Shown here: in pieces, positions 27,326 through 56,600 of the stretch | Layout: each line of letters starts with the position of its first letter | Numbering within the stretch: the first letter of the stretch is position 1 | Assembly: GCA_965202585.1 (NCBI GenBank) | Contig: OZ241830.1 | Location: 40,920,001 to 40,984,000 of the forward strand | Length of the DNA stretch: 64,000 bases | Source of the DNA: Thalia democratica | Taxonomy: Eukaryota | Direction: 5' to 3' | Position numbers and translations under genes: made by a program | The notes under the pieces: generated by a model | Databases searched by the model: none | Told to the model about the DNA's origin: nothing | What the model saw: only the letters and a program-made list of their open reading frames with translations

Positions 27326-27774
27326 CTAGTAGTAATATAGAGGGTTTTCTTTGTCATAATCAGAAAGAAATTTGAAAAAATCTTTGTTGTAATCTTTAAA
27401 TTCTATATTTTCAGTGCTAGGGTTTGATTGAAATTTTCGATCTTTTATTGGCTTGATTGTTTTGTTTGGTATACTTACATCAAACTTATAATCGATTGAA
27501 TCTTGTAAATAATCATTGTTGTTACCGATATAATCAGCTATTGCATCAGCTTTTTCTTTTTTGATCTGTTTTTGTAAATCTGAGGAATTACTTTTTGATT
27601 TGCGAATTTTTTCATGTAGTCTTTTTTGATTATGCTTTTTGACCAAATTTAAATTATGATAAGAAAGTCCATTTGTTTTTATGCCAACATCTATAGTATT
27701 AATTGTATCAAACAAATCTAAATCTGAACTAGCTTTAGATAGAATTTTTTCCACTGAAGAAAAATCATCTTCAT
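27326..27774 (-). CDS. Terminal coding exon of the proteoglycan-like gene
   Basis: TTTCAG acceptor, then DEDDFSSVEKILSK...KDFFKFLSDYDKENPLYYY* (TAG). It coincides with ORF-track 27326..27754. Confidence 0.75.
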
Positions 27775-30700
27775 CTGAAAGTACAAACTAGTTAAAAACT
27801 TTACATCAATTAGAAAACATAAAAGCAAAACAGTTAGGTATATGCTATAAAAGTTAAGTTTTATTTAGTATTTTACATGATTGTTTTAACAGTTTTAAAG
27901 TTTAGTAATAACTTAAGTTATCAATGGTTTACGACTAGAGTATAAAACAATAACACAACCACCTTAAATCGTAAATTTAATAGATAGAAAACCAGATTCT
28001 TTTTTTTAACGTAAAAACTGAAGCCAAACTAGTGTTAAATTAAGTTTTAAATTATGATAGAACTAGTTGATATTTTATTAACTTTTTTAGTTAAAAGCAG
28101 TGTTTTTTAAAGTATACATCTGTGCTTAGCAGAATTTGAAAAACACTGGCTTAAAGTATTTCTGCTACTAGACATTTTGTAGAAAGAAACGATCAAAACT
28201 TAAAAACACATTCTGTTTGATGGAAACAGCTTGCTATTTAAATCTTATTTTTATTTATTTTTTTTTAAAAGAAACAAATTTGTTTACGAAAAATAACACT
28301 TAGAATATTTTAACAGTTTTCTTAGACTTGTCAATTTAATGCAAACTTAATATATTTAACTTTTAACAGCATAAAATAATGACATATTATAAAAATTCAT
28401 ACCATCACAATAATCAGCAGAGCTAGATCCTTCTATAGATTCTTTAGTACTTTCTAAAAACAATGTTTAAATGTTTTTTTTTCTACTTGTTTACTTTAAG
28501 TAAAAATGACTTTTTTTTTACGTAAACTATAATCCTCGTAAAGTATTAAACAAGATTTACTTCAGAATTAATAAAAACACAAATTTATTTTAAATTTGTT
28601 ATTCTCGAAGTGTATAGCATAAAATTATACTGTCTTTATTTTGTCATTTTAGGTATTACTAATTTGTCTTAATAAAAATAAAACATAACATTTTTTTACA
28701 TTTATAGTAAAATGATGCTAACAATATAATTTATCAAAACTTGTACTTTGTCGCACTTTTTTAAATAAAATAAAAGTTATATAATAGAAGCTAACAATAT
28801 ATATGGTAATCACGTTTTTAGTTTTATACAAATTTGTTATTAAAATTATAATAAGTTCGAACAAGTCTAAACAACCTTACCTGTAACGGTGACTGGTATA
28901 CTAGGTGTCAGTGTTGTTTTAGAAGCTTGGTACATTTCTGTAAATTTTTTTTTTATAAATAGCTAACTTTCCTACTAAATAAAAACTCAATTTTATCTTT
29001 TTAGCATATCTATTTGAACTTTGATTTAAAGGGTCGGCAAACCTTTTCTTACGGGACAGCTCTCCTTCGTGTTTCAAAGATTATAATCAACTTTTGAAAA
29101 ATAAGTCATACTAAGTATTCTTATAAATAATGTTTACAAATGTGGTCGTAAATTACTTTTGAAAAAACTGTAGTACTCAAATAATGATAGTTTAAGTAAA
29201 TTTAGACTTTAAAGTGTTTTAAAACATTTTAGTACTATACTTATGTCCACTTACTTTTATAAAAAGTTATATTTGTTCCAGTTTTCGTTATACTACGTAT
29301 TTATAAGAGCTAGAATGAGTTACAGTCAAAATTGTTTGTGTTGGTATTTAGTATGTATCTTTTATTAGTGTAATTTTTACAATTAAGAAACATTACAAAG
29401 AAATTAAGAAAAATTTGAAGTTGCAGCCTATAACGCATAAAAAAAAATTGGGTAGAGATGTGTTTTTACTTGTATAAGTTTTCGGTTGATTGGTAGTCAA
29501 CATTGCCTTTGTCGATGCTGTGTGAGTACCTGCTGCAAAAAAACTAATTACCTACTTATATTATAAAATAAATAAAAACAACCTAGTTTACTATTTTATC
29601 CAATATGTCAAATAAAATATCTAAAAAAAAGCTGTCTTACTAGTATGAGTACTTGTTCGACTTGAAGTTAATGCCGGCATAGAAGACGTATGGTAACTCT
29701 CTGTAAATCAACTAAAATTTATATAGTTATCGAAATTGAATCTAATTTTTATACTAAATTGCATTACAAAAGCTTTTGAATAAAGATATATTTCAAATTT
29801 TCAAAATTAAGCCTAAAAAAATATGATAAGCTTTAAAATTTAGTTTTAGTAAAATGAAATATATTAAAAGATAAAACTTAATAACTTTTAATAACAGATA
29901 GTTTGAAAAATAACAAAATCATAAGTTATGTAGAAACTATACTTGATATATTTTCACTTACTTTGTAAGCCTTTTATAGTTGTATGATTAACGAAACCTT
30001 GTTTGTAATAAAAGTTACGTATATAAAAAGTATTAATGCAAACTGGCTATTGATGTTTAGCTTAAAAAAATTAAAAAAACTATGTCTTGTCACTAGATTT
30101 TTAAATTAACTTATAAAACATTGATACAAACTGTTTCACATTGTCTGAGATGAAATACAAAAACACAGTGATAGCTTCTAATTATATAAACAAATCAACT
30201 TGTTCTACGACGGAAACAAGTTTGTTCATTGAAAATTGTTTTAAGTAAACAATTGCCTTAAATTACTTTTTTTGGAACTAATAATAGTTTAAAATGCAAC
30301 TAAACTTTTGTTAAAAACTGGAAGAAACTATAAGACTAGACGTATGTTTCATACATATTTTTAACATTTTAAAAGGTACTCTTGCAAGTTGAAAATTTTC
30401 TAAATCTACTTTGTAACTTAAAACTAAATTTATAAAACTGTTAGTTTATCAGTTTGAATTTTTCTTCCGAAAAGTCATTATATTTCTCATATACATCAAA
30501 AAACTATTTTTTATAATAGAAAACCTGATAGCGCAAAGTAAAAAATGATAGCTTATCTATCTGTTTAGCAAAATATTTTTAAAACTAATTTGATTGGTCT
30601 AAGTTTTCTAAAATGCTTTCAACAGTTAAGTTCAGAAAACGTAAACCAATCAAATTTAATGTAAAAAAATAATTAAGCAAAATAGATAGATAAGTTATCA

Positions 30701-33700
30701 TTTTATTACTTTGCGTTATGAGGTTTTATTATAAAAAATAGTTGTTGACAACCTTTTTTTTTTATTTGTGTTAACAATACAAAACATTAAGTAATTAAGT
30801 TTCAGGTGAAGGTGAAAAATATCATAAAGTTTCGTACTTACTTACTTTATTATCAATTAACATAGCTTATTATTTTATTGAAATCTTTTTTTAAGTAGTA
30901 ACGTTTCCAGCTATTATCTGCAAAGCCAAGAACACCGGATCATCGTGGCTATATTTTTTTGGGGACACGTTCAAAATCCACCTGCGATCAAAAACCACCC
31001 GATCAAAATCCACCCAGACAAATTTGAGAACTGCTTACCGATCGAGATTAAGGGTTAGAGGTAACAGTGATAGTGAAAAATTAATAAAAAAAATAAAATA
31101 TATATGAAATAAGTTAATATTTTAAAAAATATAAATAAAATCGGAAGGGTTTTGAACGCGGGTGGATTTTGATAGTATACCATTTATTTGATGGATCCTA
31201 ACTATTTTGAAGTAAGCTGAGTGTTGGGTGCATCATCCATGGTGCTCATGTGATTCAGCTTATTTTATTTCTGTTACTACATATACTAAATCTAAAGTTT
31301 TGATTAAAGTTAATAAAATGTTTCTTATGTTTCAAATAATTGATTTTTTTAAATTGCTTATGTTAAAATACTTGGTAAAAATGCCAAGTATAAACAAACT
31401 AAAAGTTAAGTAGCTAACAAAGTTTTCTGAACTAAACTTGCATTCGTTGATATTTTTGATCCACTTATAAAATACTTCATACTTTCTCAAAAATTAAAAA
31501 AGCTACTTTCTAATATAAATTTAACTCAACCTACGCTTTTATAGTAAAGTAATTAAATAATACTTAAATTAAGACTTACGTGTTTTTTGTCAAAAATTTT
31601 TACTGATTTGAATAAAAAAGTGAAAGCAAGTGTTCAGTTTGTTAACTACAAAGATTACATGACAAATTTTGAAGAAAATAATTTATTGATAACTAAACAT
31701 AAAGATACAATTCGATACTTTTTTATAATTAAAAGTTAACTAGTCAGGTTTAATTTACAAGTTGTTTTACAAAAAGAATGTTGTTTCAGCTTGTTCTTTA
31801 AATGAAGTTAAAAAAAGTATAGTATCTGAGCAAGAGCTATTAAGTTTTCTGAGTTATATCAATACAAACTTTAACGTCTAAAAAGATGTATGGCTGCAAG
31901 GAATCACGAAACTTAAACTTAAATTTTTTTACAAATTTATATATTAGCACTTTATATTGATCAAAAATATGTTTGTTTAATACTTTAAACATAACATTTG
32001 TTAAAATAACTTTTCTAAGAAAATTTTTTAGACCTAAAGTTAAGTTTCAATATTCAAAACAATAGTACAACTTTTTTCAATTTTTCTAAATTTCAATTAA
32101 AAAAAATAGTTTAATAACTTTTTTACTAGTATTTTTAGACTTCAAAATAATTCTAAATTCTATAAAACATCTTTTAAACTCATGAAATTTTAAAAGAAAC
32201 TGAATAGCTTACAAACTTCAGAATACGAATGCTTTAAAACAATCAATAAGCAAGAAAACATCTTCTAAAAATCAATTGACAGTGATTATTGTAGTAGGTT
32301 GTATATGCGCTTGGGTGTTATGATTTCAGTTTCAAAAAAGTGAGTTGATTCTGAAAAGTTCAGTTTGTTTAATTCTAATCAACTATTCATGCAGAAATAA
32401 AATCAAGAAAAAAACATTTTTAAAAGTTAAACTAGAAAGTTCTACAAACTAAAAAAGTAAAAAAAAAACTTACTAACTTGAGAATATTTTACAAGTAACA
32501 ATTTAAAAGTAATAATACTAGTAATCTTTTATTACAAAACTTTACTGTTTTAGTTTTTGAGTTTCATAATTTTAATCAGGTTGTTTCAAATATTGTATTG
32601 TTAAGTAGTTTTCTAAAAGAACAAATTTTACTAAAGATTTATTGATTTTTTACTAGTCCATATATTTTAAATTTTTTATTTAAAACATTGAAAGATTCAA
32701 TTAAAAATCAGTGCTAAAATCTTGTATACATTCCATTATTGAATAAATCACATTCAATTTATAAAACAATGATAAATGGTAGGAAATGTGCATTTGTAAC
32801 AAACATGAAGTGAAATTTTTGTAGAAAGAAGACTAAAAAATTACTAACTGTATGGCTAAGGTTAAAAAAGATAATTCGAGGTCAGACAAAATTTAGCATT
32901 TAATCACTTATGCTACGTGATAGGGAGTAAAAAAATTAAAAAACGTTTTAATTGAATACATTGCTGGAACTTTATCAATAGCATTTTAACTTTACATTAA
33001 CAAAATTAAACTATCTAATATTATTAAAACACTAGAAATTCAATAGATAAATATTTAAGCCTGCGAAAACACAATTAAATATTAAAGTTTTTACTTTATA
33101 TACTTTTACATGCTTCAAACATTTAAGGTATAAGATATTAAAAGTATAAGGTATTAAAAAAAAAAAACTCTTGTTTCTTAACCTTTTTTCGGCAGTGTAA
33201 GTTCTTCTGTGGAAGTGAATACATCTGAAATAAATTGCTTAGTTTCACTCTAGTTGAGTATTTATTAAAAATATAAAATATGTTTTGTTTCTGTTAGAAA
33301 ATCAAAATACTGGAATATAAGTGACCAGTATTTATACAATAAGATATACAAGACACTTAATTTCAATAAAACTAGATATATTTCGAGCAATTTTGATCAG
33401 TAGAGTATAAAGCTAACAAAAAACAAGATTTAAAAAGTTATATAATAAGCAAGTAATCAAAAAGTAATCAAGAGATTAATGAAAGACAAAAGCAGTTAGT
33501 AAAAACAAAAATAATCTAAGTTTATTTACCTTATAATTAATCTATAGTAAAACTAAAAATCAATGTAATGAAAACAACACTTATAAAGTATTATAAAAAT
33601 AAAGAAACAGTATAGTAAAATCTTTTTGCTTGGTTTCCTTAAATAAAATCAAATAGCTTCTAGTTTATTCAAATCGAAAAAATTATTACAAGTTTTAATA

Positions 33701-36700
33701 AATTTTTATCTATTTAGATTACAACTGTTTCGACATGTTTAATAATTAACCAAATGAATACTGATGAGAATTGCTTGAAATGTATTTGGTTTTATTAAAA
33801 TCAAGGCACACAATTTCAATAAAACCAGATATATTTCGAGCAATTCTCATCAGTAGTCATTTGGTTAATAATTCAACATGCGGAAACAGTTATAATCTAA
33901 ATGGGTTTAAATTTATTGAAACTTGTATTTATGTTTTCGATTTGACTAAAATAGAAGCTATTTGATTTTTTTTAAGGAAACCTGTTTTATGTAAATAAAA
34001 ATATTTTGACTATACTGTTTCTTTATTTTCGTAATAACTTATAAGTTCTTATTAAAATCAAAATACAACAACATAATTATAGTTGTAACAAGTTATTTTG
34101 TTATTTAACTTAACATAAATTAAGTTAAGTATTGTAGACTTTTAAACTTCAAAGTTCTGTACACTAGTTATTTAGATCACATTTAGATATCTAATAAACA
34201 TAGCCTAGTGTTTTACTATGTACCAACTCTAAAAAGTATATCTATAAAGCTTGCAAAAATTTTTTTATAAAAATTAAATTATTACAAAAAAAAGGCTTAA
34301 CTGTTTTCACTTTCAACACAGCATAAGCTATGTGAACGAATCATAAGCAAACGTGAAGAAAAACAATTACTTTAATGATTTTAAACTTAAAAGCGATTTA
34401 GAGTGATCAATAAAACATGGCATAAAACTTTAATCGCTCAGAAAGTTGTATACCACCCAAAAAACAACCGCAAAGTTTATCCAAAGGTGTAAGTCGAGGA
34501 AAGATAAAAAATTAATCTGACACCTTAAACTTTAGAAATTTATTCAAAGTAACTTAAATTCTCACACATGATCAAAAATAAGATGGATCAGTTTAATTCC
34601 AGTTTTAAGAGAATACGTAATTGCAACTTTGTAAATTGCTTTCAAATGAACGTGTTCTGAACTTAAGAAAACTATTTTTATATTCTCAGTCACCATAAAC
34701 TGCAAGTGATCAATGTAATAAAAAATGTACTTTATTCACGTTTAAAAAAGACTTTGCGAGCGGTAAAACATATGTAGCAAGCTTTAAACTTTCAGTTTAA
34801 CAGGTTAAAGTTACGTCACTGGTTTAAAAGTCGTGCGATAGCCATCTGCGGCTCTCTTTGAATGACAGTAATATAATTGTTCTACCTTTAAACCTTTGCT
34901 GCTCATCATGTAATATTTCGTATTTAGCTACCATTATAATTGATTTCAATACCTGATACGCTTAATGTACTTTTATCCTACGCACATAAGGGGATTTGGT
35001 TTTTAATGTCTTTTTACTAAGTTGATGTTTGAAACAAAGTACACATTATTATTACTAGTCATTAAGAAACATAACTTGAAATCAAAATTACGCACTTAAA
35101 ATAACAAATTTAATCAGGGCAGTTCGCATTTTTTAGATTATAAATTTGTATTATTAACAATTGAATTTCCTAATGCCATGTAAAAAATCCACTAAAATTA
35201 TTCTCTTTTTGTCTGATAGTATAAAGTACTTTTACGGCGAAAAAAAGTATTTTAAAAGATTAATCTTTAAACACAGCTTTAATAGAAACATAAGTTTCTA
35301 AATTCTTTTTGTGAATTTTATTACAGCTTGAAGTCATAAAAATAGATTAAAGAATATAGATTTAATTTACCTTTATTTACTAAAAGTTAATGAAAGTGCA
35401 TCTAAAAACTTTTTAGTAGTTCAAGTGAACAAAAAATACTTACTTTTGATACTTAAATAAGCCACTGGTGAGTAAATTCTTATTTATTTAAAGCAAATGT
35501 TTTAAATAAAAATGCAAACACACTTTTGGTGTACGAAGGTATTTATTTTATTATAGTTTTAGCAAAACTTGTATTTTAATTAGGAACAAACGAAAGTAAT
35601 TGAAAACAACTACTATCACTTAGAGTTGTGTTTTTACAAAGTTCCTAAGAGTTTGAACTAATAAACGTTTATTATTACAGAAAGTTTTGTTGTATTAAGT
35701 TTTATTCACGAGAAATAAAATATTAGCACTGTATCTTTAAATACCATCTATAATAAAATATAAGTATAAATAAAAAAAGATTGTTTACAAATTTAGCATT
35801 AAAAATTCTAGAAACAAAGTATACAGTATCACAAAAGTCATCTGTACTAAATATAGGTTCTAAATTAATGGCAGTAACCTTATCATGATTAATAGCAACT
35901 ACGAAAATCTTGTTTAATATTTCCGCTAAATGTAGAAGGAAAGTGTTAAAAGATTTGGATTTAGACAGGATGTAATAATGCGTCAAAAGAAGATAAAATG
36001 CACATTTCTAATAAAGATCACGTTTTGTCTTTTGATGTTTTTTCAATGGATTTTGTGTTTCGCAATAAATTTTTCAATTATAAAGAAAAAAAATATAAGT
36101 ACCTCATTTCTCAAGAAAAACTGTGATGAATACTTTAATGATTCTTGTTACTATAAATATTTTTATATTTCGACTATTTTTAAAAATTTTCTGTGATATG
36201 GTATGACCTGCTTTTAAAAATGTGTACTAATTTGGAGAAAAAAAAGTTAAATCAAAATTTTATTTTAATTTTAATCAAAAGTCTTTAAATTGATCAGTTT
36301 ATAAATTACGAAATGTAGGCAAAAGTAGTATTTGGCGTTTAATATTTGTTTCTTAAACTATAGGTGTTTTTCTGTTATGTTTTTTGTTTATAGCTGAAAC
36401 ATAACATAGTTTAAAACCGTTTACAAGAATGAATATTTTGCATATAAGTCAATCATAAAAGAATTTTAATTTTAATATGCATTTGTAACCGCGAATTAGT
36501 TTTCAATTTAAATTTCTACCCTATTTTTTATTATTATAGACCAAAACTTTAACTTACACCTGTAGCTAAAACCTTAAGATATTTAATACAAAATAAATTT
36601 ACATAAGAAACCAAGTTTTAATCTCTTTAGTACCCGTAATTTTGTAATTTTTAAAAACCCTTAATTATGCTCTCCCACAAAAATAATACGTGATAGAAAA

Positions 36701-39700
36701 ACCTTACATAAGATAGACATTATAGAGTTTTTTAGATTAAAATGATTAAACTGCATTTTAAGATATTAGTTAAGCAAAATTTCTAAACGTTTGTTCAAAA
36801 CAGACTTCATGTTTATGAAAAATCTTAAAAACTCATTAAAATGAATTATTGGTTTAATAGTTCCATTAAAAATACTAATATTATAACTTATTTTAAATAG
36901 CTTTTAAACAGTTTGCAACAGCTTAAAAACAGTTAAACCTTTGGTTTAGTATGAAGCTATGAAGTATATGTATAGTTTATATAAAAAGTGATAAAAAATA
37001 GTTATATCTGTCATTTTTAGCTTCTTATAAGATTAGTTTTGATGTTTCTTATTTAAAAAACTTTAATCACATAAATGATCTTAATCTTATAACTAAAAGT
37101 GTTAATATATTTAGTACACTTGAATAAAAAAAATCAAGACTTTTCTACTAATGATTATTTAGTTCATAAAGTGTATATTACAAAAAGTGTATGACAATCA
37201 TCAGAAGTATCTTACTCAATATTTTATAAAAAAAAATACATAAGCGATTAACTATTGTAAAGCAATTAGTTGCTGAAGTGTATTGTCTGTGATTTGTAGA
37301 CAAAGTAAATCTTTTTTTTAAATTATTTAGGTTATTTGAAATTATGAATAAGGAAAAAATTCCAGGCTACTTTGTATAAAATGAAACATAGAAATAGTTT
37401 TAAATGCAAACCATTAATCTGCTTAAATGAGAAAATTAAGTTTTACAAGCAACAAGAGTTTACTTTCTAGATTTATAAAAAAGCTTTCGATAATTACTTA
37501 AGTGAAATAATTTAACAATTTTTTTCAGATTAATCTAAGGCAAACCAAAAATTTTCACCGACAAAACTATTGAAAATAATTATTCATTATTTTTAGAGCT
37601 TATTTTTTACCATAATGTTGTTGGCAACTAATCAGAAATTGCAAACGAACCTCCATCTCCAGACGACGTTGCGAATTCATCGTCATCGGTCGTTTCAACT
37701 GCTGGTGTCGCACTTTCGGTAGAATAAACATGTTTGTCAACATCAGGAGTTATTGTCATTTGCTGCTCATCAGTAAAAGTGACATCAGGAGTGTTTGTGG
37801 TTGGTTCTTCCGTGTCAGATACATCGGGAATTACATCCAGTTCATCTGAATCCGTAACTTCTTGTGCATTTTCTGGTGTTAACCCAACAGCAGGAACTTT
37901 GACTACAAGAATAAGAATTATAAAAGTATAGTGTTTTAACAAATTATATTAGATAATGTATAAAACGGTTGTGTTTACATTTATAAATACAAAATTTTAT
38001 GACTAATATTAATTAGTATAATTAGTTTAGTAAACATTGCTTGATTAAATCTAATTAGTTTAATTTTTATTTATTGAGTTATTTATGTTTTAAATAATAC
38101 TTTAGTTGTTTTAATTTACCTTTTTTATATAAGTCTTTTTGTAAAATCTGGCAACATATACAAGGATTAAATAGTAATGAGTATACGTCACAGACTAGAA
38201 TATACAAAAGAAAAACAATACCGTGATTTAAAAACATTTATTTTCAAACAAAACTTAACCAACCTTGACCGTTCAAATCTTCAGTAAAATAAGCTTGTAC
38301 TCTAAAATTAGGATTTTCGAAGTTCAATTTAACTTCAGCATATATTTTCTCATCTGTTTTATTTATTTAAGAATGCTTTTAATAATAATATAGAAGTATT
38401 TCAGTTGAACTATTACACGTCTTAATTTTTCAAAAGATAATTATTAAACTTTTCTCATAACTTTAAGGTAAAATTTTCGTTTTGTGTAAACGTAAGTATT
38501 AATTAGAGTAAACTAAATTTAACAAACTAATTTTAATTTAAAGCGAAGAAAAATACTTTTAAAATACTATTTCTCGCTAGTTTTTCAAGTTTTATGCATG
38601 AAATAAAGTTTTATTTGTAATAGTCAGAACACTAAAATTAAAAAAACACAATAAAATTAGAGTGTAGTTTACTTTTTAAACTATTACCTTTATCTAAATT
38701 TTTGTTAACAATGCTGTTGATACTATCAATGTTCTCCATAATCTCGTTTCTGTGTAGATTTAGTTTGTGCTCTATTTTTGGTGGCACATCGTTGTATTTT
38801 CTTTGCACGTTGTAGCGAACTAAAAGTGGATTTGAAAAGCGTTTTCGTAATCGACCTGCAATAAGTATAATTAAAACAATGAAGTTTACAACAGTAAAAA
38901 ATATTCACTAAAAAATACTATTTATTTTTATATTTTATTATTAACGATATTTTAAGGTTTTGGCTCTTTTGCTACCGTTGTTGTTATTTACGTTTTGTTT
39001 TTTTTAGTTTATAAAGTCTTGTTATAACTTTATTATTTAAAAACGTATTTAAATGTATATATTTATTTTTAAGTATAAAATCTAAACAAATGAAAAATAT
39101 TTATAAACTAAACGACCAAATATTTTGACTGTTAACACTAAATATTTAGAAAAAGATTTGAATATAATTGTGACCTGTTTTAATCTATATACCAACTTGC
39201 TTTAAAGTACTTTTAGTAACAATAAATCTTTTACTGGAATATATTTAAACAAAAAAAAGTACTGGTTACAATCTGTTTAATACTAACGGTGTTCTCTTTT
39301 CCTCAATGGTCTGGATTCGTTTGATACTGAAAAAAGTAGTTATAGTTTGAAAGTGTAATTGTGAATAACAGTAAATAAAAAACTTACTTATAATTAGAAA
39401 CAGTGTGATAGCAGCTATGTAAAAGTGTTTAGTCTTCATGTTAAGCTTATATTAATTAAAAATAAAAAGTTTGTTAGTAGTTTTGTTACTCCTGCAAAAA
39501 AAAAAACTTGTTCATTTGTATGATCAAAACAAACTAAACTAGTTTCAATTATTCTAGCTTAAACTATAGATTCAAATACTCTAGCTTGATTTAACAAATA
39601 ACAGATAAGTTTTAAGTTCATTTCTTTGTAGAACAATTTTCGCGTTTAAAACTGAAAGTTATCATGACTTGGTTTAATGTAACCAAACTACAAAGTCATT

Positions 39701-44786: not shown

Positions 44787-44829
<43 letters not shown>

Positions 44830-47800: not shown

Positions 47801-50605
47801 AAATTTGTACAATTAGATTTTTTAGGCAGTTTTATGGCTACTTTGTTTTTAAAAGAGCTTCTATTTACGTAAATAAGACTAATTAATCGAAATATAAAGT
47901 AAGTAAATTTAAATGAAAAATAAAACATCTTTATTTGTTTGTTTTAAAGTTTAACAAGTCTCTTTTATGAAAATATTGTTTGTAAACAATTTTAGCAATT
48001 TTTAGCAAAACAAGGCTAGAAAAATAAAGAAACAAATAAATTACGAAAGTAGGTGAAAAACAGTCTTGCATAACTTATCGTATTAAAATTGGAATGTTTT
48101 TATAGAAACAATAAATTTTTGTTTTGCTGTATGAACTATGTATTAAAATTTTTTTTTTTTAGAAAATATTTAAAAATCAAAATTGAATAAAAAAAGTTCT
48201 AAAACTATATATGTTATTTAACATAAGTTTCAAAAGGAAAATTTTTGCTGATAAATTAATTCTAAAAAATACAAAGAAGTAAGTTTTATTTATTAACTCG
48301 AAAATAACCGTCAATTCTTTCAGGAGTAATGATTTCAGTTTCGACAAAATGAGTTGACTCTGTTTTGGTTAAAAAAAGGTTTTAGTATCAAAAATTTGTT
48401 ATAACTCATTTTTTACAACGACATACAAAAGCAAAGTGCTAAAAAAACCAAATAGTTCTATTTTTACCAAGTCTAAAAAAGCTAGTTCTAAAATTCTTCT
48501 CATATAAATATATCAAAATAATTTATTCAAAAAACAGTATATACCTAAACTATTACCTAAAGCTTTTAGATAGTTTAAAACTTTAATCATGTTAAACAGT
48601 TAGCCTATTTTTCATATAATAAAGTCTAATAGAATATTTTAAACAATTTTTTTATCTGTTTATACATTTTTACCTGTAATAGTTTAAAACTTATTAGTGT
48701 AATTTTATAATAAAAATTGAAGAACTTTACAAAAAAGTTAAATATACCTTTTTTTGGGAGGTATTCTTCTGTTGAATTGTAGATTTCTATTAAAAAAATG
48801 TTTAAATTAACAAACTCCATATTTCAAGCATATATCTATTTTAAGTTTTAAGTAATAAATTGTATCAAATTAAAGCTGTTTAAAAGCAAGCAAAATGTAA
48901 GTTTATTAATTTTAAAAAACACCTTTTATTTATTTAAATAAAATAAAAAAGATTGTAGTTTAGCTAACAAAAACTATATCTTGAGAAATAAAATTTTTCA
49001 AGCAATTAAGTATTCAAAAACAAAAAATGTCTAATTTTTCAAATTGTTAGTTTTTGCATACCATATATACCACCCAAAATTAAACCTCAAAGGTAATCCA
49101 AGTTTTTTGGTATACATACATATAAGTTAAAACCGTTACTTAACCGTTTATTCAAGTTTAAGCTGGCTTTATTTTTTGATATATAATAAGTATTTTTTTT
49201 TTTTTTCAATAAGATTGTTTTTATAGCAGACATAATTAAACATTTATGAATAGACTATGTGCATAAGCTATCTATTTGCTGAAAAATTTTGTGTGTTATA
49301 TTTAAAAAAAGCTTAAAAAGTTTTATATATATGCTGTTTATTGACCGATAAAACAAAAATGCTCAAAAAGTTTGGTCTAAGGACCTGGTGTACTAAGGAA
49401 CCTTTCGGTTATCGAATCGTACACCACATGCTTATAAAGTTTCTTACGAGCGATTACACTTTTTTTTTATCATTTGAATATTAATATCTTTAGTAATAAG
49501 ATAATCCGTTTAACGAAATGAAAGAAAAGAAAACTAATCAAAAATTAGCTGAATTTTGTGTTTAAAAATGTACTTAAAACTTGTTTAGTAACATAAGAAA
49601 TAAAAAAATGTATATTACTTTAAATTGATCTGAAAATATCATCAAAAATAACTTTAATCATAAATATTAAAAGTTTAATTTAATTTCTAAAAATAATACA
49701 TTGTTGGTGAACTCAGAGGTACTAATACGCAAACTATCGAATAAAATATATTTGAAAGATATAGATTTTAGAATAATTAAACTTATTTATGTATATTTTG
49801 AGTCATCAAAAAAAAAAAATCTTTGAACTTTTTACGTAAAAGTTGTTTCTTCTAATTTTGCAAACTTTAACATAAAAGCTCTTTTGTATTCACTTTTGAC
49901 TTTAAATTCGTGGCTTGTCTTAGACAGTTATCGATTTATGCTTATTTGCAATCAATTAAAAATCATTGCTGTTTCCGTTTAACTGACAATGAGGTGTTAA
50001 TAAAAATGTACCAACAGAGGATGTTTTTACGTCATAGAACGATTAAGTTACCGGCCAGCTACCAAGTAAAAAAAAAATTCTTGGAATACTTATACTTTTT
50101 GCCAGCATTAGTTGCAGTTTTATAAATTACAAATATTTTATTTTTTACCTTCATCACCAGAAGAAGTTATCATGTCGTCGTCATCAGATATTTGTGGAAA
50201 ATTCACTGTTGAGGTTGCTTTTATGAAATCAGAATCATCTTTAATCATATCGACCGTTCCTATGTTCTTATTTGTGGCTTTGGTATAAGGATCTTTAAGA
50301 AATATTTCATTTTAAAGTTATAAAAACTTTGCTAGAAATAAGGCTTTATATTAAAAATACTGAACAGATTACCATTTAAAAAATATGTAAATAGGTTTTC
50401 GAAACTAAACTACTAAAATAACTGATTTTGCGAATACGTAAAATTTAATAAATCCTATAAGTTACATATCTTTAAACACTAACTTTTATCAAAATAGTTG
50501 CTGTAAACTTCGTTAATTTTCCGAGTCTTAATTATATTATTTCGTAACCTAAAACTGCTGATCCTTTTCCCACTATGATTTCTTGAAAATAATTTGTAAG
50601 GTCTT
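27326..50605 (-). CDS. Orphan multi-exon Ser/Thr/Asp-rich, proteoglycan-like protein (5' end not found)
   Basis: Phase-1/phase-1 AG..GT exons, all multiples of 3 and open: 50605-50549, 50292-50149, 48359-48309, [41974-41939, 40897-40841 tentative], 39326-39288, 38855-38724, 38353-38264, 37902-37651, 33224-33183, 29700-29641, 29529-29470, 28937-28881, and terminal 27774-27326 (..ENPLYYY*). Every junction codon is sense. Two acidic SSGD motifs are present. The function is inferred. Confidence 0.7.
30961..31181. mobile_element. MITE-like element
   Basis: TCAAAATCCACC occurs near the left end (repeated internally) and as GGTGGATTTTGA at the right end. The ends are GC-rich and the middle contains an AGGGTTAG-like motif. 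Confidence 0.6.
33581..34044. repeat. Long imperfect palindrome (arms ~33581-33800 and ~33813-34044)
   Basis: The reverse complement of the left arm aligns along the right arm with scattered substitutions and a small indel. A third partial direct copy lies at 33359-33403. Confidence 0.85.
37651..37902 (-). CDS. Acidic Thr-rich exon ending in DDDEFATSSGDG
   Basis: CTTGTAG acceptor, GTTCGT donor, 252 nt, GC-richer than the flanks; it lies within ORF-track 37628..37942. Confidence 0.8.
44791..44826. repeat. (TA)18 microsatellite
   Basis: Uninterrupted TA run read directly. Confidence 0.95.
45236..46886. repeat. Perfect 240-bp inverted repeat (45236-45475 / 46647-46886), 1171-bp spacer
   Basis: Base-by-base comparison of 45236-45475 with the reverse complement of 46647-46886 found no mismatch. 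Confidence 0.95.
49361..49426 (+). repeat. Short dispersed hairpin element, copy 3
   Basis: GCTCAAAAAGTTTGGTCTAAGGACCTGGTGTACTAAGGAACCTTTCGGTTATCGAATCGTACACCA. Confidence 0.8.
50149..50292 (-). CDS. Acidic exon ending in DDDDMITSSGDE
   Basis: TTCTTAAAG acceptor, GTAAAA donor, 144 nt open frame DPYTKATNK...SDDDDMITSSGDE. Confidence 0.75.
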
Positions 50606-53600
50606 CTATTTGGTAAATTACCTACGTAGCAAAACAAAAATAGTTAGTTAAAAATATTTTGTCGTTTTTATAATTCCGCAAAAGTAAATTAGTAAAAGTA
50701 ACAGCAAAAAAATGTATTAGAATTTAAGCTATCAGTAATTTTAAAATTTCGAAATATGTTAACTACTATTGTTGTTGTTTTTTTTTGACTATTTTTTTTT
50801 TATCAAATAACCGAAATTCTAATAACAAGTAGGAAGTTAAAAAGTTTTAAGGTACGAAAATACAAACTAACTACGTTGTTTTTTTCTTATTGACCTACCA
50901 TCCACTGAGCCTAAATTCAAAATTATTGTTAAAAATTTTTTTTTGACAAACTTTTTGTACATACAAAAACTATATAATCTTACCTATTATTATGATTAGT
51001 GTTAGATAAATAAAGCAGGTAAATTTAGTGATCATGTTTAGTTTTATAATTGATCTGAAAAATAACTTTGCTGTTTTGAAAAGTTTTTGTTATTGAAAGT
51101 TTTAGTAAAATAAAAAGTCACGCATTATAAGTGAATTATTTTTTCTTAATAGGTTAAAAACTAAAAAAAACGCTTTTACAATAACACTAAAATGTTTTGA
51201 GTTACTATTAAAATGAATAAATTAACTCATAATTACAACACTAACAAATTTAATCTATTATTGGCTGTTAAATGTTAATTTTAAGTATTAAACTAGGATT
51301 AAGTTTTTATGTTTATGATAACGCTTTTTAGTTATCAGATTCTATTTGTTTATCATTATGTTTCATATAAGTAAAATCAGTTTAACTTTCGTAAACACTC
51401 AAAAATGTGTAATATAATTTATTTAAAAAATGTTTCATTAAACTTTTACTATCCGTTTAAAATATATTATAACATAAAAATGCTTTGAAACTACTGAAAA
51501 ATGTACGTTACAATTAATAATGTTAGCTTTACGTATAAACAAACAAAAAAAAATAGGTAGGACTTTTATTTATTTTTACATTCACTTATTACGAACAAGT
51601 ATGTAAAAAACATAATAGTGTAAGTAGAACAATACTCATAGAAAAAAAAACTGTAAAATAATAATACAAATTTGATGTATTTCTACTTTAAGTATAAAAC
51701 TAGTATTATTTCATCAACTGTCTCATATAGAGTTTTTCGTTGAATGATATATTTAGTAACATGCTTTAGACACATGGCGCTATGATGGCTAAAAGTTAAA
51801 ATTAAAAACCCTTTCTAGCTTAAATCATTTACAATTTAATTGTGTATAATCCATTCTAAAACAACAAAACAGTCATAAAAATAGCAAAAAAGTATTGATT
51901 TATACTGTACATTGAAAACAATTTATAAATGTTAGAAGGTTTTTTAAGAAGCCTTGTAACCTTAATATTTTTTGAGATTTAGTAAAAGTCTAGTTGTACA
52001 TATTTTATAACAAATATTCTGTTTGAAAAGTCTAAAACATTTTTTAAGATTCATTTTACAGTATAACAGGTAAACTAAAACTAAAAATATACACAGTATG
52101 AGTTAATAAAAAAAAATGTCAAACATAGTGGAAGGTACTGCTATATTTGTTATATGCTATATATATTTATATACTGCTTTGTTTTGTTTAGTTTGGTTTG
52201 TAGTGCTCTATAGTTTATAGAATAAGTAGTGCGACATACGTGTAAGGTATAAACAAAATAAAAGTTTACATATGTTCTGCCTGTACAATAAATCTACATG
52301 TATATATGAGTTTTAGAGTAAATTGTATTTTAATAATCACTACTGTTAAACTGGTAGAGTTTATGCATAATACTACTACAGAAATTTAAATATATATATA
52401 TTATTACATGTTTATACAATTTTGATCGGACTAACATACATTTACTTCAGAATAAAACAACAATCTTAAGTGGTAGGTTTCGTGCATATAAAGAATTGAA
52501 ATTTAGTAGATTTTGCCAATTCTTAATCTTTTCTAATTAATACTTTAAGTCGTAAAAAAGACTTTTAATAGTATCAAATACTCTGAAATTGAAAAACTCT
52601 GATATTACGAGATAAAACTATTTTTAGAAAGTCTGCCTAAACTCACGCAATTTAGTGTTTAAATTAGAATAACTTGCTAAAAAGTTTAGTTTTATTACAT
52701 AGATTAAAGGTTTTTTGTTAAAAAATTTGTGTTTGACTCATTAGTTTTACATTAAACTTACCACATGCTACTTAGTGGTTTGATATTTATTGTACTTATG
52801 ATATTTGTTTCCAAATTTTATAATTTTTATCAAAATATTTTAATAAAAGTAAAAATAGTTTTAGTTCTGCTTGTAAAACAAGTTTGTAGCTCATTATGGT
52901 TAATAACATAATTTTCTTCAAATTGTTGTAGACGATAAAAAAATTAGAAAAAAAAACTTCTCAGGCCGTTATTTAATCAGAAAGGCTAAAGAGCTTAGAA
53001 ATAACTGTCAAATGAGATATAAACCAAAGTATTTATTCACAAAGCTTTCATAATTTATTTTACAATTATATTTATCAGACCGTTATATAACTTTTTTAAA
53101 CTCAAACATTTTCGATAAGACTATGTTAGATAAATAAAGAATAACTAAAATGCAAATTTTTGTTAAAACTTAAAACAAAATTACGTAATATAAGTTCTTT
53201 CATAGATATCTATTTGTTTTTGTATTGTCAAACAGTAAAAAAAATCTCACCTTTGTTTATTTGTTAAATAAACAATAAAACCTTACTGAAGATGTTTTAT
53301 ATTTGAATATACTACAGGGTTGAATTCGTTCCTTCACAATTCAGCTACACATTGAAATTTTAATATGGATTTTTTAGTTTTCAGTTGTGTAAATTATTAT
53401 TTTTATACGTTGTAGAAAAAAAAAATATTATCATAAGTACACGACAAGTTTAAAGCGCTACATAAAAGAAAGACAAGTTATGGTCGAAATTATTTTTTAT
53501 ATTCTATATTTTAGTCCGCTGTGTTTGTAAGTATAATATAACTACAATTCTTTAATATAAAATTACAAAATATCAATAACATAAGTTTTGCTGAAGTTCA

Positions 53601-56600
53601 AACCCTTAGAATTTTATTTGAAAAATTAAAAACTTAGGTCTTATTTTCTTATTACGAGTAAGATATAAATTGCGAATTTTATTTCTAAAAACGTTACTTG
53701 TAAAAATTTATATGGTCCAATAAAAATAAATTAAAACAGAAAATATAATCAGTTAGTAACAATTAGTAAATTGAATAATTAAATAAATTGCTTTAAACTA
53801 TTTCAAACTATTATTTATAAATTTGTTATTAATATATTAAACCATACAAAGTAACAATAAAAGCTTTACTAAAATTTAATTTTCTTAAATGAATACAATT
53901 TCACAGAAAAACATTCTTATTCAGCGGTTTAATAGTTAACTAACAGGAAATAATATCGAATAAAACTGTAGCACTAAACACAGTCTTCAGAATTTATTTT
54001 TGAAACACAAATGCTTTTGTTTTATCTAATAGCTTACCTGTGACTATTTGAGCTACAGTATATCTTTTATTGAGTAATACATTTTAAACACTAAATCAAG
54101 CTTTTACACATAACTCAAAATAAATAACCCTAGGTTAAATTTTATACTTTACTTTGATATACTTATATACACTCTTTTAACGACAAATTACTTAAATCAA
54201 AAGTACGCAAAACGCTCACGTATAATTCCAATACCGTATAAATAATTTGTTAATTTTCCAACTTTTATTGAAAAATAGTACAAAGTAAACTTTGAACAAA
54301 AACTACGTAATAATATGTTGTTTAAATGTTTCTATTTGTGAGTTCTTTATACTTTCTTTTTCTATAAGGATTTAGTAAATCTTATTATATTTAAAAAAAG
54401 AATACATTTAATTATTTCTAAAAACTAGTGCATTATAAGTAAACCAATTTATATAAGAACAAATTGGCTGGTCTACCAAGTAATAAGAACTATATTGTAT
54501 TTCAATATATTTAACTTTTTATATACGTATGACTAGAAAAAATAGTTTAAAAATTTTAGTAGTTTTTTATACTATACACAACTAATTTATTTTTTTATTT
54601 TAATAAATTAATACATTAATTAATTGTAATTTATATGATTGTTATTTTTTTCAATTGTTGTAAAACCTTTTTTTTTTCATTTTTTTAAATTAAATGTTAT
54701 GTCTTTCAAGCTTGAATTAAAATACTTAAAGTATTACTTAAGCTATCTTAGGAAGAATTTAATCTAGTTTTATTTAAAGTTTTAAAGCTTACAATTTTTT
54801 TTGTATTGTACTACAAGATTTTTAACGTTTTACCCGCCAACTTTGACCCTGATTTAAACCACAAAATCACTTTACGTTTAACACTAAGCTGACACCAAAA
54901 TGCTTGTATTAAGACCGCTAAAGTATTCTTAGAGTATAAAAATGTTATACAGAGTTAAGTTATAAGACTTACATAATTAAATCGAATTTTAAGCAGGAAT
55001 AGTTGGTTTTTTATTTTATATATTACCTTTAGCGTAATAAAAGTTTAGGTTTTGCCTCATCTCATTTAAATAAAACTATACTATTTAAGTATCTTTACTT
55101 ACTTAGTAATTACTGTTCTGAACTTATGTCCATTTAGTTTTAAACTTTTCTTTAAAGTATTTTTTAAAACAAGACTTTTAGTAAGCTTATTTCAACAGAT
55201 ATGTGGTAAAATTTTCTGTCTAAGTTTTTTAATTCCATTTAGAATAATTAGAAATATATAAAATGAAATTTTAAACTTTAGGAAAAAGCTATTATAGGTT
55301 TAACATCCTAAAATTGTTCATATCTATACAAAAATTAATAACTTTAAAGTCTTAAAAATAAGTTTAGTAAAGAATATTTTTTGTTATTTTGTACGTAAAA
55401 GTTAAAAACAAAATCGTGTAGAAGAAAACAAAAATTGACTAAAACTGACTTGTGTAAACCAACATAAAACTTTAATGTTTTAAAAAATCAAAACTTTTAT
55501 TTTTCTGTCGGCTACACTAAAGTTAGAGATAACCGTTTGCAAAAGTTATTACTTATATACTAATGGTAAGCTTTATATTTGACCAAGAAAAGCTTAAAGT
55601 ACAAACAAACAAAATATTTCTGCAATATTTAAACGCGGTTATGAAAAGACCATGAATATCAATTTTTTTTTTGATGTTGTAGAACTTTTATGACAAATTA
55701 AAAATTTCGTAGAGAAAAATAAAATAAAATTTATATTGAAAAACAGATGAAATTTTTCAAAATACTTTGAATTACCGAAATCATTTTAAGTGTAATTTTT
55801 CTTTTAAACTGTTGCACCGCAAGTATTAAAGTTCATGTTGTTATTTTTCATCACGTAAACCGCTCACGTACATTATAAAGTGCTATTTAAGAATAGACAT
55901 TACGGCATATATCGGTTGAAACTCTGTACAGACAAAAGTCTGTAAGAAGTTGGCATTACTTATGCTTTATTAATAAGATTATGTTAAACAGGTTTAAACT
56001 AAAGAAAAGGAACTTTATATACAATGCTTTTTTTCTAAATGATGTCTTATAAACGTATTATTAAAGCTTAGTAATTTTTAATTTAAAAAGGTTTATGGTA
56101 AACTGAAATTCAAGTAAATGAAGTTTTTGTAAAGTAATATCAAAAACTTTTTATAACTTTGTATCTAGATAAACTCATATACGATGTAAGTCAATCAATA
56201 TTTTAAACAAATTATGAATTTTCACTCATTAAAACGTTCCGCTAAGCAAAATAACAACCACAAAAGTAATCAAACTTTACAAACCTTACCCGATACATAT
56301 TTAAAAACCACAAAAATTCTAAACTTCGATTAGCAGAATTGTCAAAAGTTACATCATACTTAATGTTTGTAAGAATGACTAACTAAGACCAAAATTTTAA
56401 AGTTGTAATACTCTAGTGATATCTATATTGATCTAAACATTTTTACTTGATAAAATATTTTCAAAACATTATGTCTAAGTATTCCATTAAAAATTCTATG
56501 TTTAAAAAATATTAAAACATTTAAGTTTTGGTTGTGATATGTTGTCAAGTATTTTTTTAAAGTAAAATTGAAATGTTTGAGTGGTTTTACTTTTAATTCA

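What the first reader, a model, noticed from the sequence alone, without database searches (positions are those of the whole stretch)
27326..54052. Orphan modular proteoglycan-like gene built from symmetric phase-1 mini-exons
At least 12 exons, most 36-144 nt, are all phase 1-1 and therefore freely skippable. They are spread over >23 kb and encode an acidic, Thr/Ser-rich protein with no recognisable domain or C-terminal TM segment. Two sites, SDDDDMITSSGDE and TDDDEFATSSGDG, match the known acidic-cluster + Ser-Gly glycosaminoglycan attachment pattern (SGD as in perlecan domain I). The gene lies tail-to-tail with the ECM gene FREM1. It is a candidate undescribed secreted matrix proteoglycan with combinatorial splicing.
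Basis: partly seen in the sequence, partly recalled or inferred. Interest (0 to 1): 0.7.

Follow-up and report, generated by a model that had tools for sequence, protein, structure and literature searches.

The report
Three small genes, two secreted paralogs
The supposed 27-kb "proteoglycan gene" is three separate small genes of a planktonic tunicate; two of them are sister genes for short secreted acidic proteins that keep a motif resembling a sugar-chain attachment site, so this is an unnamed lineage-restricted family of modest interest.

Summary
They do not form one gene. cDNA-like contigs and metatranscriptome contigs split the interval into three minus-strand transcription units.

- Gene 2 (51035-48286): 6 coding exons, 160 aa. 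It carries SDDDDMITSSGDE.
- Gene 1 (39439-32286): 7 coding exons, 235 aa, with its own stop and 3'UTR. It carries TDDDEFATSSGDG.
- Gene 0 (29680-27326): 5 coding exons, 219 aa, no signal peptide found.

All 15 introns are phase 1.

Genes 1 and 2 are tandem paralogs. Each has an N-terminal signal-peptide-like segment, then a basic stretch, then an acidic Thr/Ser/Pro-rich stretch. Both end in a shared ~45-residue module (67% identical) that begins with the DDD..SSGD motif.

Gene 1 is under purifying selection (omega 0.24 overall, 0.15 over the motif and C-terminus). SSGDG is invariant in four sequences, from at least two related taxa besides near-copies of the window's own. No Pfam family, language-model look-alike or confident fold was found, and relatives appeared only in marine plankton data.

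A single conserved glycosaminoglycan site is plausible but untested. I saw no evidence of combinatorial splicing. The FREM1-like neighbour faces gene 0, not the motif-bearing genes.

The parts
50984..51054 (-). Gene 2 exon 1: short 5'UTR after an AG acceptor, ATG at 51035-51033, signal-peptide-like MITKFTCFIYLTLIIII, phase-1 donor
   Evidence: Sequence; tblastn similarity to the gene 1 ortholog N-terminus; hydrophobic window at residues 1-22, Kyte-Doolittle 2.38
50875..50910 (-). Gene 2 exon 2 (36 nt, phase 1-1), GSVDGRSIRKKQ
   Evidence: Homologous to gene 1 exon 2 (..SRSIRKREH) by tblastn; splice sites read. Inferred; no direct RNA joint seen
50484..50621 (-). Gene 2 exon 3 (138 nt, phase 1-1), strongly basic peptide
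   Evidence: Open frame with AG/GT sites that keeps the phase; intact and free of indels in metagenome contig L016. Inferred
50149..50292 (-). Gene 2 exon 4 (144 nt, phase 1-1) ending in SDDDDMITSSGDE (50150-50188)
   Evidence: 97% identical peptide P0013 in a Tara metagenome contig; homologous to the end of gene 1 exon 5
48748..48786 (-). Gene 2 exon 5 (39 nt, phase 1-1), EIYNSTEEYLPKK
   Evidence: The loose end of an X5 cDNA-like contig equals 48750-48779 and joins it to the next exon
48286..48359 (-). Gene 2 exon 6, ESTHFVETEIITPERIDGYFRVNK, then TAA at 48288-48286
   Evidence: The X5 contig reads straight through the GT that would be needed for a phase 1-1 mini-exon here (loose end = 48299-48328)
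39388..39491 (-). Gene 1 exon 1: 5'UTR after an AG acceptor, ATG at 39439, signal-peptide-like MKTKHFYIAAITLFLII, phase-1 donor
   Evidence: cDNA contigs L015 (97% identity) and L001 align here; sequence; hydrophobic window at residues 3-22
39288..39326 (-). Gene 1 exon 2 (39 nt), SNESRPLRKREH
   Evidence: L015 and L001 alignments
38688..38855 (-). Gene 1 exon 3 (168 nt), basic conserved region RRLRKRFSNPLLVRYNVQRK...
   Evidence: L015 99% and L001 78% nt identity; omega 0.11 for the N-terminal region
38264..38353 (-). Gene 1 exon 4 (90 nt)
37651..37902 (-). Gene 1 exon 5 (252 nt), acidic Thr/Pro-rich, ends in TDDDEFATSSGDG (37652-37690)
   Evidence: the X5 loose end at 33226 equals 37653-37682, which is the exon 5 to exon 6 joint
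33183..33224 (-). Gene 1 exon 6 (42 nt), DVFTSTEELTLPKK
   Evidence: X5 and X1 joints on both sides; L015 and L001
31757..32350 (-). Gene 1 exon 7: ESTHFFETEIITPKRIYNLLQ, TAA at 32288-32286, then 3'UTR
   Evidence: An X5 contig of 1294 nt (depth 99) lies on 31757-32350 and leaves at the acceptor; stop codon read; L001 and L015 3'UTRs align
29641..29759 (-). Gene 0 first exon seen; first ATG at 29680-29678, in-frame TGA at 29710-29708
   Evidence: An X5 contig covers 29641-29759 and runs through the proposed acceptor at 29700; no X5 depth over 29900-30899
29470..29532 (-). Gene 0 exon 2 (63 nt, phase 1-1), Thr/Ser-rich
   Evidence: X5 depth is 9.71 at 29509 and 0 at 29533; the bin depth fits
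28881..28937 (-). Gene 0 exon 3 (57 nt, phase 1-1)
   Evidence: X5 bin depths fit a 9.71-deep contig over exactly these bases
28403..28453 (-). Gene 0 exon 4 (51 nt, phase 1-1)
   Evidence: X5 bin depth 2.48 = 51 x 9.71 / 200; conserved in frame in L009 and L010
27124..27774 (-). Gene 0 last exon: 148 codons, TAG at 27328-27326, 3'UTR (3' end approximate)
   Evidence: An 852-nt X5 contig leaves the genome exactly at 27774; 70-83% identical ORFs in Tara metagenome contigs, with indels in multiples of 3; single copy in the genome
30900..31299 (.). Very high-copy repeat in the gap between gene 1 and gene 0
   Evidence: DNA-run depth about 3e5 against about 200 in the flanks; no Rfam or tRNA match

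Best explanation
The interval holds three separate, transcribed minus-strand genes in which every intron is phase 1.

Genes 1 and 2. Gene 1 (39439-32286, 235 aa) and gene 2 (51035-48286, 160 aa) are tandem paralogs of a family seen so far only in salp-like marine plankton. Each encodes, in order:
- a cleavable-looking signal peptide;
- a strongly basic stretch that opens with a conserved Arg/Lys cluster;
- an acidic, Thr/Ser/Pro-rich segment predicted to be disordered;
- a conserved ~45-residue C-terminal module (DDD-x-x-x-TSSGD, STEE, LPKKESTHF-ETEIITP-RI) spread over three exons.

Inferred mechanism. The products are secreted, largely unfolded acidic glycoproteins. The invariant acidic cluster + Ser-Gly is a modification site, most likely xylosylation that seeds one glycosaminoglycan chain, which would make them small 'single-chain' proteoglycans. 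The basic N-terminal part may be a convertase-processed or polyanion-binding region.

Gene 0 (29680-27326, 219 aa) is a third, unrelated, weakly constrained gene with Thr/Ser-rich mini-exons and no signal peptide.

What is shown: the exon chains, the separate transcripts, the paralogy and the purifying selection. What is inferred: secretion, from sequence only.

Sub-probabilities:
- genes 1 and 2 are separate genes: about 0.9;
- gene 0 is a separate gene: about 0.7;
- genes 1 and 2 are secreted: about 0.8;
- a GAG chain sits on the SSGD motif: about 0.3-0.35.
For: Exon chains.
- An exhaustive protein search with exon 5 found P0004, a 221-aa ORF on a 1641-nt metatranscriptome contig.
- That contig, and the near-identical full-length cDNA contig L015/P0012, map collinearly to seven window exons from the ATG at 39439 to the TAA at 32288-32286 plus 3'UTR.

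Same-organism cDNA-like contigs (X5) and a marine metatranscriptome (X1).
- They give the exon 5-6 and 6-7 joints.
- They give a 1294-nt gene 1 mRNA ending near 31757.
- They give a separate gene 2 transcript: the exon 5-6 joint, and read-through to its own stop.
- They give a separate gene 0 contig whose bin depths fit four downstream exons exactly.
- Coverage is zero between gene 0 and gene 1 apart from a repeat.

Protein features.
- G1 and G2 are 67% identical over 45 C-terminal residues, E 1e-16.
- Each has a single N-terminal hydrophobic window and a basic-then-acidic charge layout; 15 of 15 introns are phase 1.
- omega is 0.24 overall, 0.11 for the N-terminal region and 0.15 for the motif plus C-terminus.
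- DDDE-x-x-TSSGDG is invariant in four ortholog sequences.
Against: - No biochemical evidence exists for secretion or for any glycan.
- The gene 2 copy of the motif is SSGDEE, which lacks the Gly after Ser-Gly-Asp found in the gene 1 copy (SSGDG).
- The motif also fits kinase sites.
- Gene 2 exons 2-4 are inferred from homology, splice sites and frame, not from seen joints.
- The 5' end of gene 0 rests on contig topology in one run. Rare joints, or a joint to a short leader, could have been pruned by the assembler.
- The AlphaFold model is uninformative (mean pLDDT 35), so 'disordered' is an inference from low confidence and composition.
Confidence: 0.65

Rival explanations
1. One reading: one >23-kb gene of 12 or more freely skippable phase 1-1 exons that encodes one modular matrix proteoglycan with combinatorial splicing.
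For: All exons share phase 1, so any chain would stay in frame. All lie on one strand.
Against: Two independent full-length cDNA contigs begin at 39439 and end at the stop at 32288-32286. The gene 2 transcript reads through to its own stop at 48288-48286. There are two separate signal-peptide exons. X5 depth is zero over 29900-30899 and 31300-31699. No alternative exon set was seen.
Confidence: 0.04
2. Genes 1 and 2 encode secreted precursors that are cut at the conserved basic cluster. The active product would be a cationic peptide (host defence or signalling), and the acidic tail would be a neutralising pro-piece. They would not be proteoglycans.
For: The RK(R/K) cluster right after the signal peptide is kept in orthologs and in the paralog. 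Net charge is +9 (gene 1) and +12 (gene 2) over residues 21-60, followed by an acidic tail. Further points: tandem duplication, lineage restriction, high cDNA depth.
Against: The second dibasic site is not conserved in P0004. The basic region evolves slowly (omega 0.11), unlike most defence peptides. The most conserved paralog-shared part is the acidic C-terminal module, which is not expected of a disposable pro-piece.
Confidence: 0.15
3. Genes 1 and 2 encode secreted acidic phosphoproteins of the SIBLING/SCPP type. The SSGD and STE(E/S) serines would be kinase targets, not xylosylation sites.
For: S-x-E motifs (YSTES, TSTEE/NSTEE) are conserved. The products are acidic and probably disordered. 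The genes are a tandem small-exon cluster. A weak language-model look-alike list includes MEPE (score 0.77; below the tool's usable level).
Against: No sequence homology. SIBLING/SCPP genes have phase-0 introns (my own knowledge), and here all introns are phase 1. Salps are not known to mineralise.
Confidence: 0.15
4. Gene 0 is not a gene of its own but an alternative 3' end of gene 1: exon 6 spliced to 29700, skipping the stop-bearing exon 7.
For: Phases are compatible. There is a good acceptor at 29700, the frame is open from it, and gene 0 has no signal peptide of its own.
Against: The X5 contig 29641-29759 passes unbroken through the 29700 acceptor. There is no depth between 29900 and the gene 1 3' end apart from the repeat. 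The depths differ tenfold (9.7 against 99).
Confidence: 0.1

Closest known systems
Small or 'part-time' proteoglycan core proteins with one GAG site (decorin N-terminus, endocan, bikunin, serglycin) and the SGD sites of perlecan domain I
   Same: Secretory signal. A Ser-Gly preceded by an acidic cluster and followed by Asp/Gly. The site is conserved among relatives. The core protein is small.
   Different: No sequence homology and none of their domains (no LRR, SEA, Kunitz or IGFBP; Pfam found nothing). There is one site per protein, not a Ser-Gly array. No biochemical evidence of a chain.
SIBLING/SCPP acidic secreted phosphoproteins (osteopontin, MEPE, DMP1)
   Same: Tandem gene cluster, many small exons, signal peptide, acidic and probably disordered products with S-x-E motifs, fast sequence divergence.
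   Different: Introns here are all phase 1, where those families use phase 0 (my own knowledge). No homology, no RGD or ASARM motif, and a non-mineralising tunicate host.
Mucin-like O-glycoproteins
   Same: Thr/Ser/Pro-rich stretches in gene 1 exon 5 and in the gene 0 mini-exons; phase 1-1 exons.
   Different: No tandem PTS repeat array, no VWD/CK polymerising ends, and products of only 160-235 aa.
Granin-type or defence-peptide precursors
   Same: Signal peptide, basic-residue clusters, an acidic region, no cysteines outside the signal peptide.
   Different: Only one basic cluster is conserved. No amidation or peptide-repeat pattern. The conserved core is the acidic C-terminal module.

Membership tests
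Proteoglycan core protein (GAG-bearing) | Entry into the secretory pathway (signal peptide) | tested here: met
   Genes 1 and 2 each have a single N-terminal hydrophobic window (residues 3-22 and 1-22, Kyte-Doolittle >1.6) after a Lys-containing start. Gene 0 has none. No dedicated signal-peptide predictor was available.
Proteoglycan core protein (GAG-bearing) | Ser-Gly with nearby acidic residues (xylosyltransferase-type site) | tested here: met
   TDDDEFATSSGDG at 37652-37690 and SDDDDMITSSGDE at 50150-50188. The motif is invariant in four ortholog sequences and shared by the paralogs.
Proteoglycan core protein (GAG-bearing) | A covalently attached glycosaminoglycan chain | not testable with these tools
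   Needs enzyme-shift or glycoproteomic experiments.
Perlecan domain I-like | Clustered SGD triplet followed by a SEA domain | tested here: not met
   One SGD per protein; Pfam finds no SEA or any other domain in P0012 or P0004.
SIBLING/SCPP | Phase-0 introns throughout the coding exons | tested here: not met
   15 of 15 introns are phase 1.
SIBLING/SCPP | Sequence or profile similarity (Osteoregulin, osteopontin, DMP1 Pfam families) | tested here: not met
   No Pfam hit. MEPE appears only as a 0.77 language-model look-alike, below the usable level.
Gel-forming or tandem-repeat mucin | Tandem PTS repeat array and/or VWD and CK domains | tested here: not met
   Products of 160-235 aa with no Pfam domains.
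Prohormone / processed peptide precursor | Conserved dibasic cleavage sites flanking a conserved peptide | tested here: inconclusive
   RKR/RKK after the signal peptide is conserved. The second site and the KK/KR pair around ESTHFFETEIITP are not conserved.
DUF4770 (PF15994), considered for gene 0 | Score at or above Pfam's gathering threshold (27 bits) | tested here: not met
   21.3 bits, E 3e-4, for all six orthologs. The sequence is Lys/Asp/Asn-rich, so this may be compositional.
FREM1 (the plus-strand neighbour only) | CSPG/Cadherin_3 repeats plus a C-terminal C-type lectin domain | tested here: met
   Cadherin_3 at 3120-3338 and 7737-8021; Lectin_C at 17988-18209. The Calx-beta domain was not recovered from the one piece tried.

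The most novel reading that the evidence does not exclude
Genes 1 and 2 define a salp-restricted family of very small secreted proteoglycans. Each would have one conserved GAG site, at the start of a conserved C-terminal docking module, and a basic N-terminal region. They would be highly expressed components of the animal's extracellular material (mucous feeding net or tunic).
Probability: 0.3. Interest if true: 0.45.

Novelty: new member of a known kind. Interest (0 to 1): 0.3.

Why it matters
The result corrects a tempting mis-annotation: same-phase exons of neighbouring genes chained into one 'modular' gene. It also gives exact models for three unannotated genes.

Two of these are an expressed, selected, lineage-restricted pair of secreted acidic proteins with a conserved candidate GAG site. 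They would be simple candidates when asking what pelagic tunicates secrete into their mucus or tunic.

The wider significance is modest. The protein class (small, probably disordered, acidic secreted glycoprotein) is familiar, and the function is still inferred.

Tried and rejected
- **Pfam** on P0012, P0004 and the gene 2 exon 3 peptide gave nothing at threshold.
- **Language-model atlas searches** gave no usable hit. I tried whole P0012, its residues 20-118, and the gene 0 last exon.
- **AlphaFold2** on a 4-sequence alignment gave mean pLDDT 35. I ran no fold search because the model is meaningless.
- **JGI metagenome scan** with the gene 0 C-terminal alignment returned four contigs that share only the short DYDKENP-like pattern. 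They encode unrelated membrane proteins and were rejected.
- **DUF4770** for gene 0 is below threshold in all six orthologs, and two papers mention it only in passing.
- **Own-genome search** with P0004 found only this locus. Gene 2 is too diverged for that search, and there is no further paralog at that sensitivity.
- **tblastn** of all three models against the window found no extra copies between or upstream of the genes.
- **Rfam and tRNA scans** of 17-56 kb gave nothing.
- **Two X5 loose ends** (at 28584 and 29827) match nothing in the window. I treated them as repeat-borne contigs.
- **Composition-only exon finding** missed most true exons.

Full report
**Setting.** The window is very AT-rich (21-28% GC). 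It lies at G000:C6:40920001-40984000 of an 802-Mb assembly. Earlier notes of this scan call the organism a pelagic tunicate, probably a salp. I did not test that. Every relative found here comes from marine plankton metagenomes or metatranscriptomes. This locus had not been reported before.

**The observation.**
- Both motifs are on the minus strand: TDDDEFATSSGDG at 37652-37690 and SDDDDMITSSGDE at 50150-50188.
- The exons that carry them have AG/GT borders and are phase 1-1: 37902-37651 (252 nt) and 50292-50149 (144 nt).
- The 3'-most open frame (27774-27329) also begins in phase 1.
- The plus-strand neighbour is FREM1-like, with Cadherin_3/CSPG repeats and a terminal C-type lectin at 17988-18209.

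**Gene 1.**
- An exhaustive search of 1.84 billion representative proteins with the 83 residues of exon 5 gave one informative spliced hit, P0004 (221 aa). It also gave two genomic exon calls from related taxa, P0001 and P0002.
- P0004 sits on a 1641-nt JGI metatranscriptome contig, L001.
- A word-index search with P0004 then found P0012 (235 aa) on the 919-nt cDNA contig L015.
- L001 (about 78% nt identity) and L015 (93-99% in six of the seven exon alignments; about 90% for exon 4, whose alignment runs into the intron) map collinearly to seven exons: 39491-39388 (ATG at 39439), 39326-39288, 38855-38688, 38353-38264, 37902-37651, 33224-33183, and 32350 onward.
- The last exon carries TAA at 32288-32286, followed by aligned 3'UTR.
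- The window exons translate to 235 aa with no break.

**Reads from the organism.** I laid four runs on 27300-33299. X5 behaves as cDNA, because its contigs leave the genome exactly at exon borders.
- A 1294-nt contig at depth 99 covers 31757-32350 and exits at the exon 7 acceptor.
- The loose end at 33226 equals 37653-37682, which is the exon 5-6 joint.
- Loose ends of the marine metatranscriptome X1 give the exon 6-7 joint in both directions.

Gene 1 is therefore a compact mRNA of about 1.3 kb with its own stop and 3' end.

**Gene 2.**
- One X5 contig landed on gene 1 exon 7 by similarity. Its two loose ends are exact copies of 48750-48779 and 48299-48328.
- So the upstream copy is transcribed. 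It splices EIYNSTEEYLPKK (48786-48748) to ESTHFVETEIITPERI (48359 onward). It then reads through the GT that would have made a mini-exon, reaching TAA at 48288-48286.
- Upstream lie an ATG exon with a hydrophobic start (51035-50984), a 36-nt exon homologous to gene 1 exon 2 (50910-50875), a basic 138-nt exon (50621-50484), and the motif exon.
- Joined, they give an uninterrupted 160-aa product.
- Exons 2-4 of this model are inferred. They are intact in a 92%-identical metagenome contig in which indels fall only in introns.
- G1 and G2 are 67% identical over their last ~45 residues, E 1e-16. The two GAG-like motifs are therefore the same ancestral site in two paralogs, not two sites of one protein.

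**Gene 0.**
- An 852-nt X5 contig at depth 9.71 covers 27300-27774 and leaves at the acceptor.
- Its remaining 201 nt equal 51 + 57 + 63 + 30 nt. The binned depths fit exons 28403-28453, 28881-28937 and 29470-29532 to two decimals. For example 2.48 = 51 x 9.71 / 200, and depth is 9.71 at 29509 but 0 at 29533.
- The next contig (29641-29759) passes through the acceptor at 29700. X5 has no depth over 29900-30899 or 31300-31699.
- The only signal in between is a repeat at 30900-31299 present at about 1500-fold genomic depth.
- The first ATG is at 29680, after an in-frame TGA. The model gives 219 aa with no hydrophobic segment.
- The last exon is single-copy. It is conserved at 70-83% in Tara metagenome contigs with in-frame indels only, but it is weakly constrained (omega 0.45-0.76).
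- I read gene 0 as a separate gene (about 0.7). A rare joint to gene 1 exon 6, or a short trans-spliced leader pruned by the assembler, cannot be excluded.

**Shared anatomy.** All 15 introns are phase 1. With roughly 30% phase-1 introns in animals (my own knowledge) that is far from chance, even when the paralogs are counted once. It is not evidence of exon skipping. The two full-length cDNAs use the same seven exons.

**What the proteins look like.**
- G1 and G2 have a Lys-containing start, a 13-17-residue hydrophobic core and a small-residue c-region. There is no other hydrophobic segment.
- Residues 21-60 carry net +9 (G1) and +12 (G2). The rest is acidic: -23 in G1.
- G1 has no cysteine. 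G2 has one, inside the signal peptide.
- Against the L001 ortholog, omega is 0.24 overall, 0.11 in the basic N-terminal region, 0.57 in the acidic variable stretch, and 0.15 from the DDD motif to the end.
- DDDE-x-x-TSSGDG is invariant in four sequences.
- No Pfam family, no look-alike and no confident fold were found.

**Mechanism.**
- Shown: the transcripts, the splicing, the paralogy and the selection.
- Inferred: secretion, from sequence.
- Inferred: the conserved acidic cluster + Ser-Gly-Asp is a post-translational modification site. From published consensus as I recall it, xylosyltransferase sites are Ser-Gly flanked by acidic residues, often SGxG or SGD. The G1 site (SSGDG after DDDE) fits well, and the G2 site (SSGDEE) fairly well. 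I put a GAG chain at 0.3-0.35.
- Rivals are kinase sites (S-x-E motifs are also conserved) and a processed cationic peptide with an acidic pro-piece.
- The conserved STEE-LPKKESTHF-ETEIITP tail looks like a binding motif of unknown partner.

**Comparison and verdict.** The nearest functional analogues are single-site small proteoglycans and acidic secreted phosphoproteins. Membership in any named family fails or cannot be tested (see the membership table). The FREM1-like gene faces the tail of gene 0. About 9 kb separates its last recognised coding exon (about 18.2 kb) from the approximate 3' end of gene 0 (about 27.1 kb), so adjacency says nothing about genes 1 and 2. The finding is real but smaller than proposed: an unnamed, lineage-restricted pair of secreted acidic protein genes plus an unrelated orphan neighbour.

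Noticed in passing
window 30900-31299: A short GC-richer block (up to 47% GC) present at roughly 1500 times the flanking depth in both DNA-like runs, and also present in the RNA runs. It is a very abundant interspersed repeat sitting between gene 1 and gene 0. No Rfam or tRNA match.
   Followed up: partly
window 19070-19309 and 22263-22467: Two GC-rich islands (57-58% GC) about 3.1 kb apart. By eye, the first contains CAGGGGTCGGCA and GCGGCCCGCG-type motifs, and the second contains their reverse complement. These may be terminal inverted repeats of a DNA transposon between the FREM1-like gene and gene 0. The repeat tool did not call them.
   Followed up: partly
window 39492-39493 and 51055-51056: The first exons of gene 1 and gene 2 both start right after a strong polypyrimidine-AG acceptor about 20-50 nt before the ATG. 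The cDNA contig L015 begins exactly there. This is compatible with spliced-leader trans-splicing, which earlier notes report for this genome. The leader itself was not seen.
   Followed up: no
L001 1-201: The first 200 nt of the ortholog's metatranscriptome contig do not align to the window upstream of 39516. They may be a diverged outron or promoter-proximal read-through, or an unrecognised 5' exon.
   Followed up: no
window 27329-27772 (-): The gene 0 last exon and all five metagenome orthologs give the same sub-threshold Pfam match to DUF4770 (E about 3e-4, 21 bits against a cut-off of 27). This is either remote kinship or Lys/Asp/Asn composition.
   Followed up: partly
window 29054-29404, 27883-28033, 32518-33138: Introns of gene 0 and gene 1 carry low X5 depth (3-7). 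For gene 0 that is close to its mRNA depth (9.7), which suggests much unspliced pre-mRNA or some DNA in that library.
   Followed up: no
Read-laying run X3 (organism B), 29479-30008: A DNA-like run labelled as another organism matches this locus at about 94%. Substitutions are denser in the first gene 0 exon (7 in 60 nt) than in its flanks, so that exon is poorly constrained.
   Followed up: no
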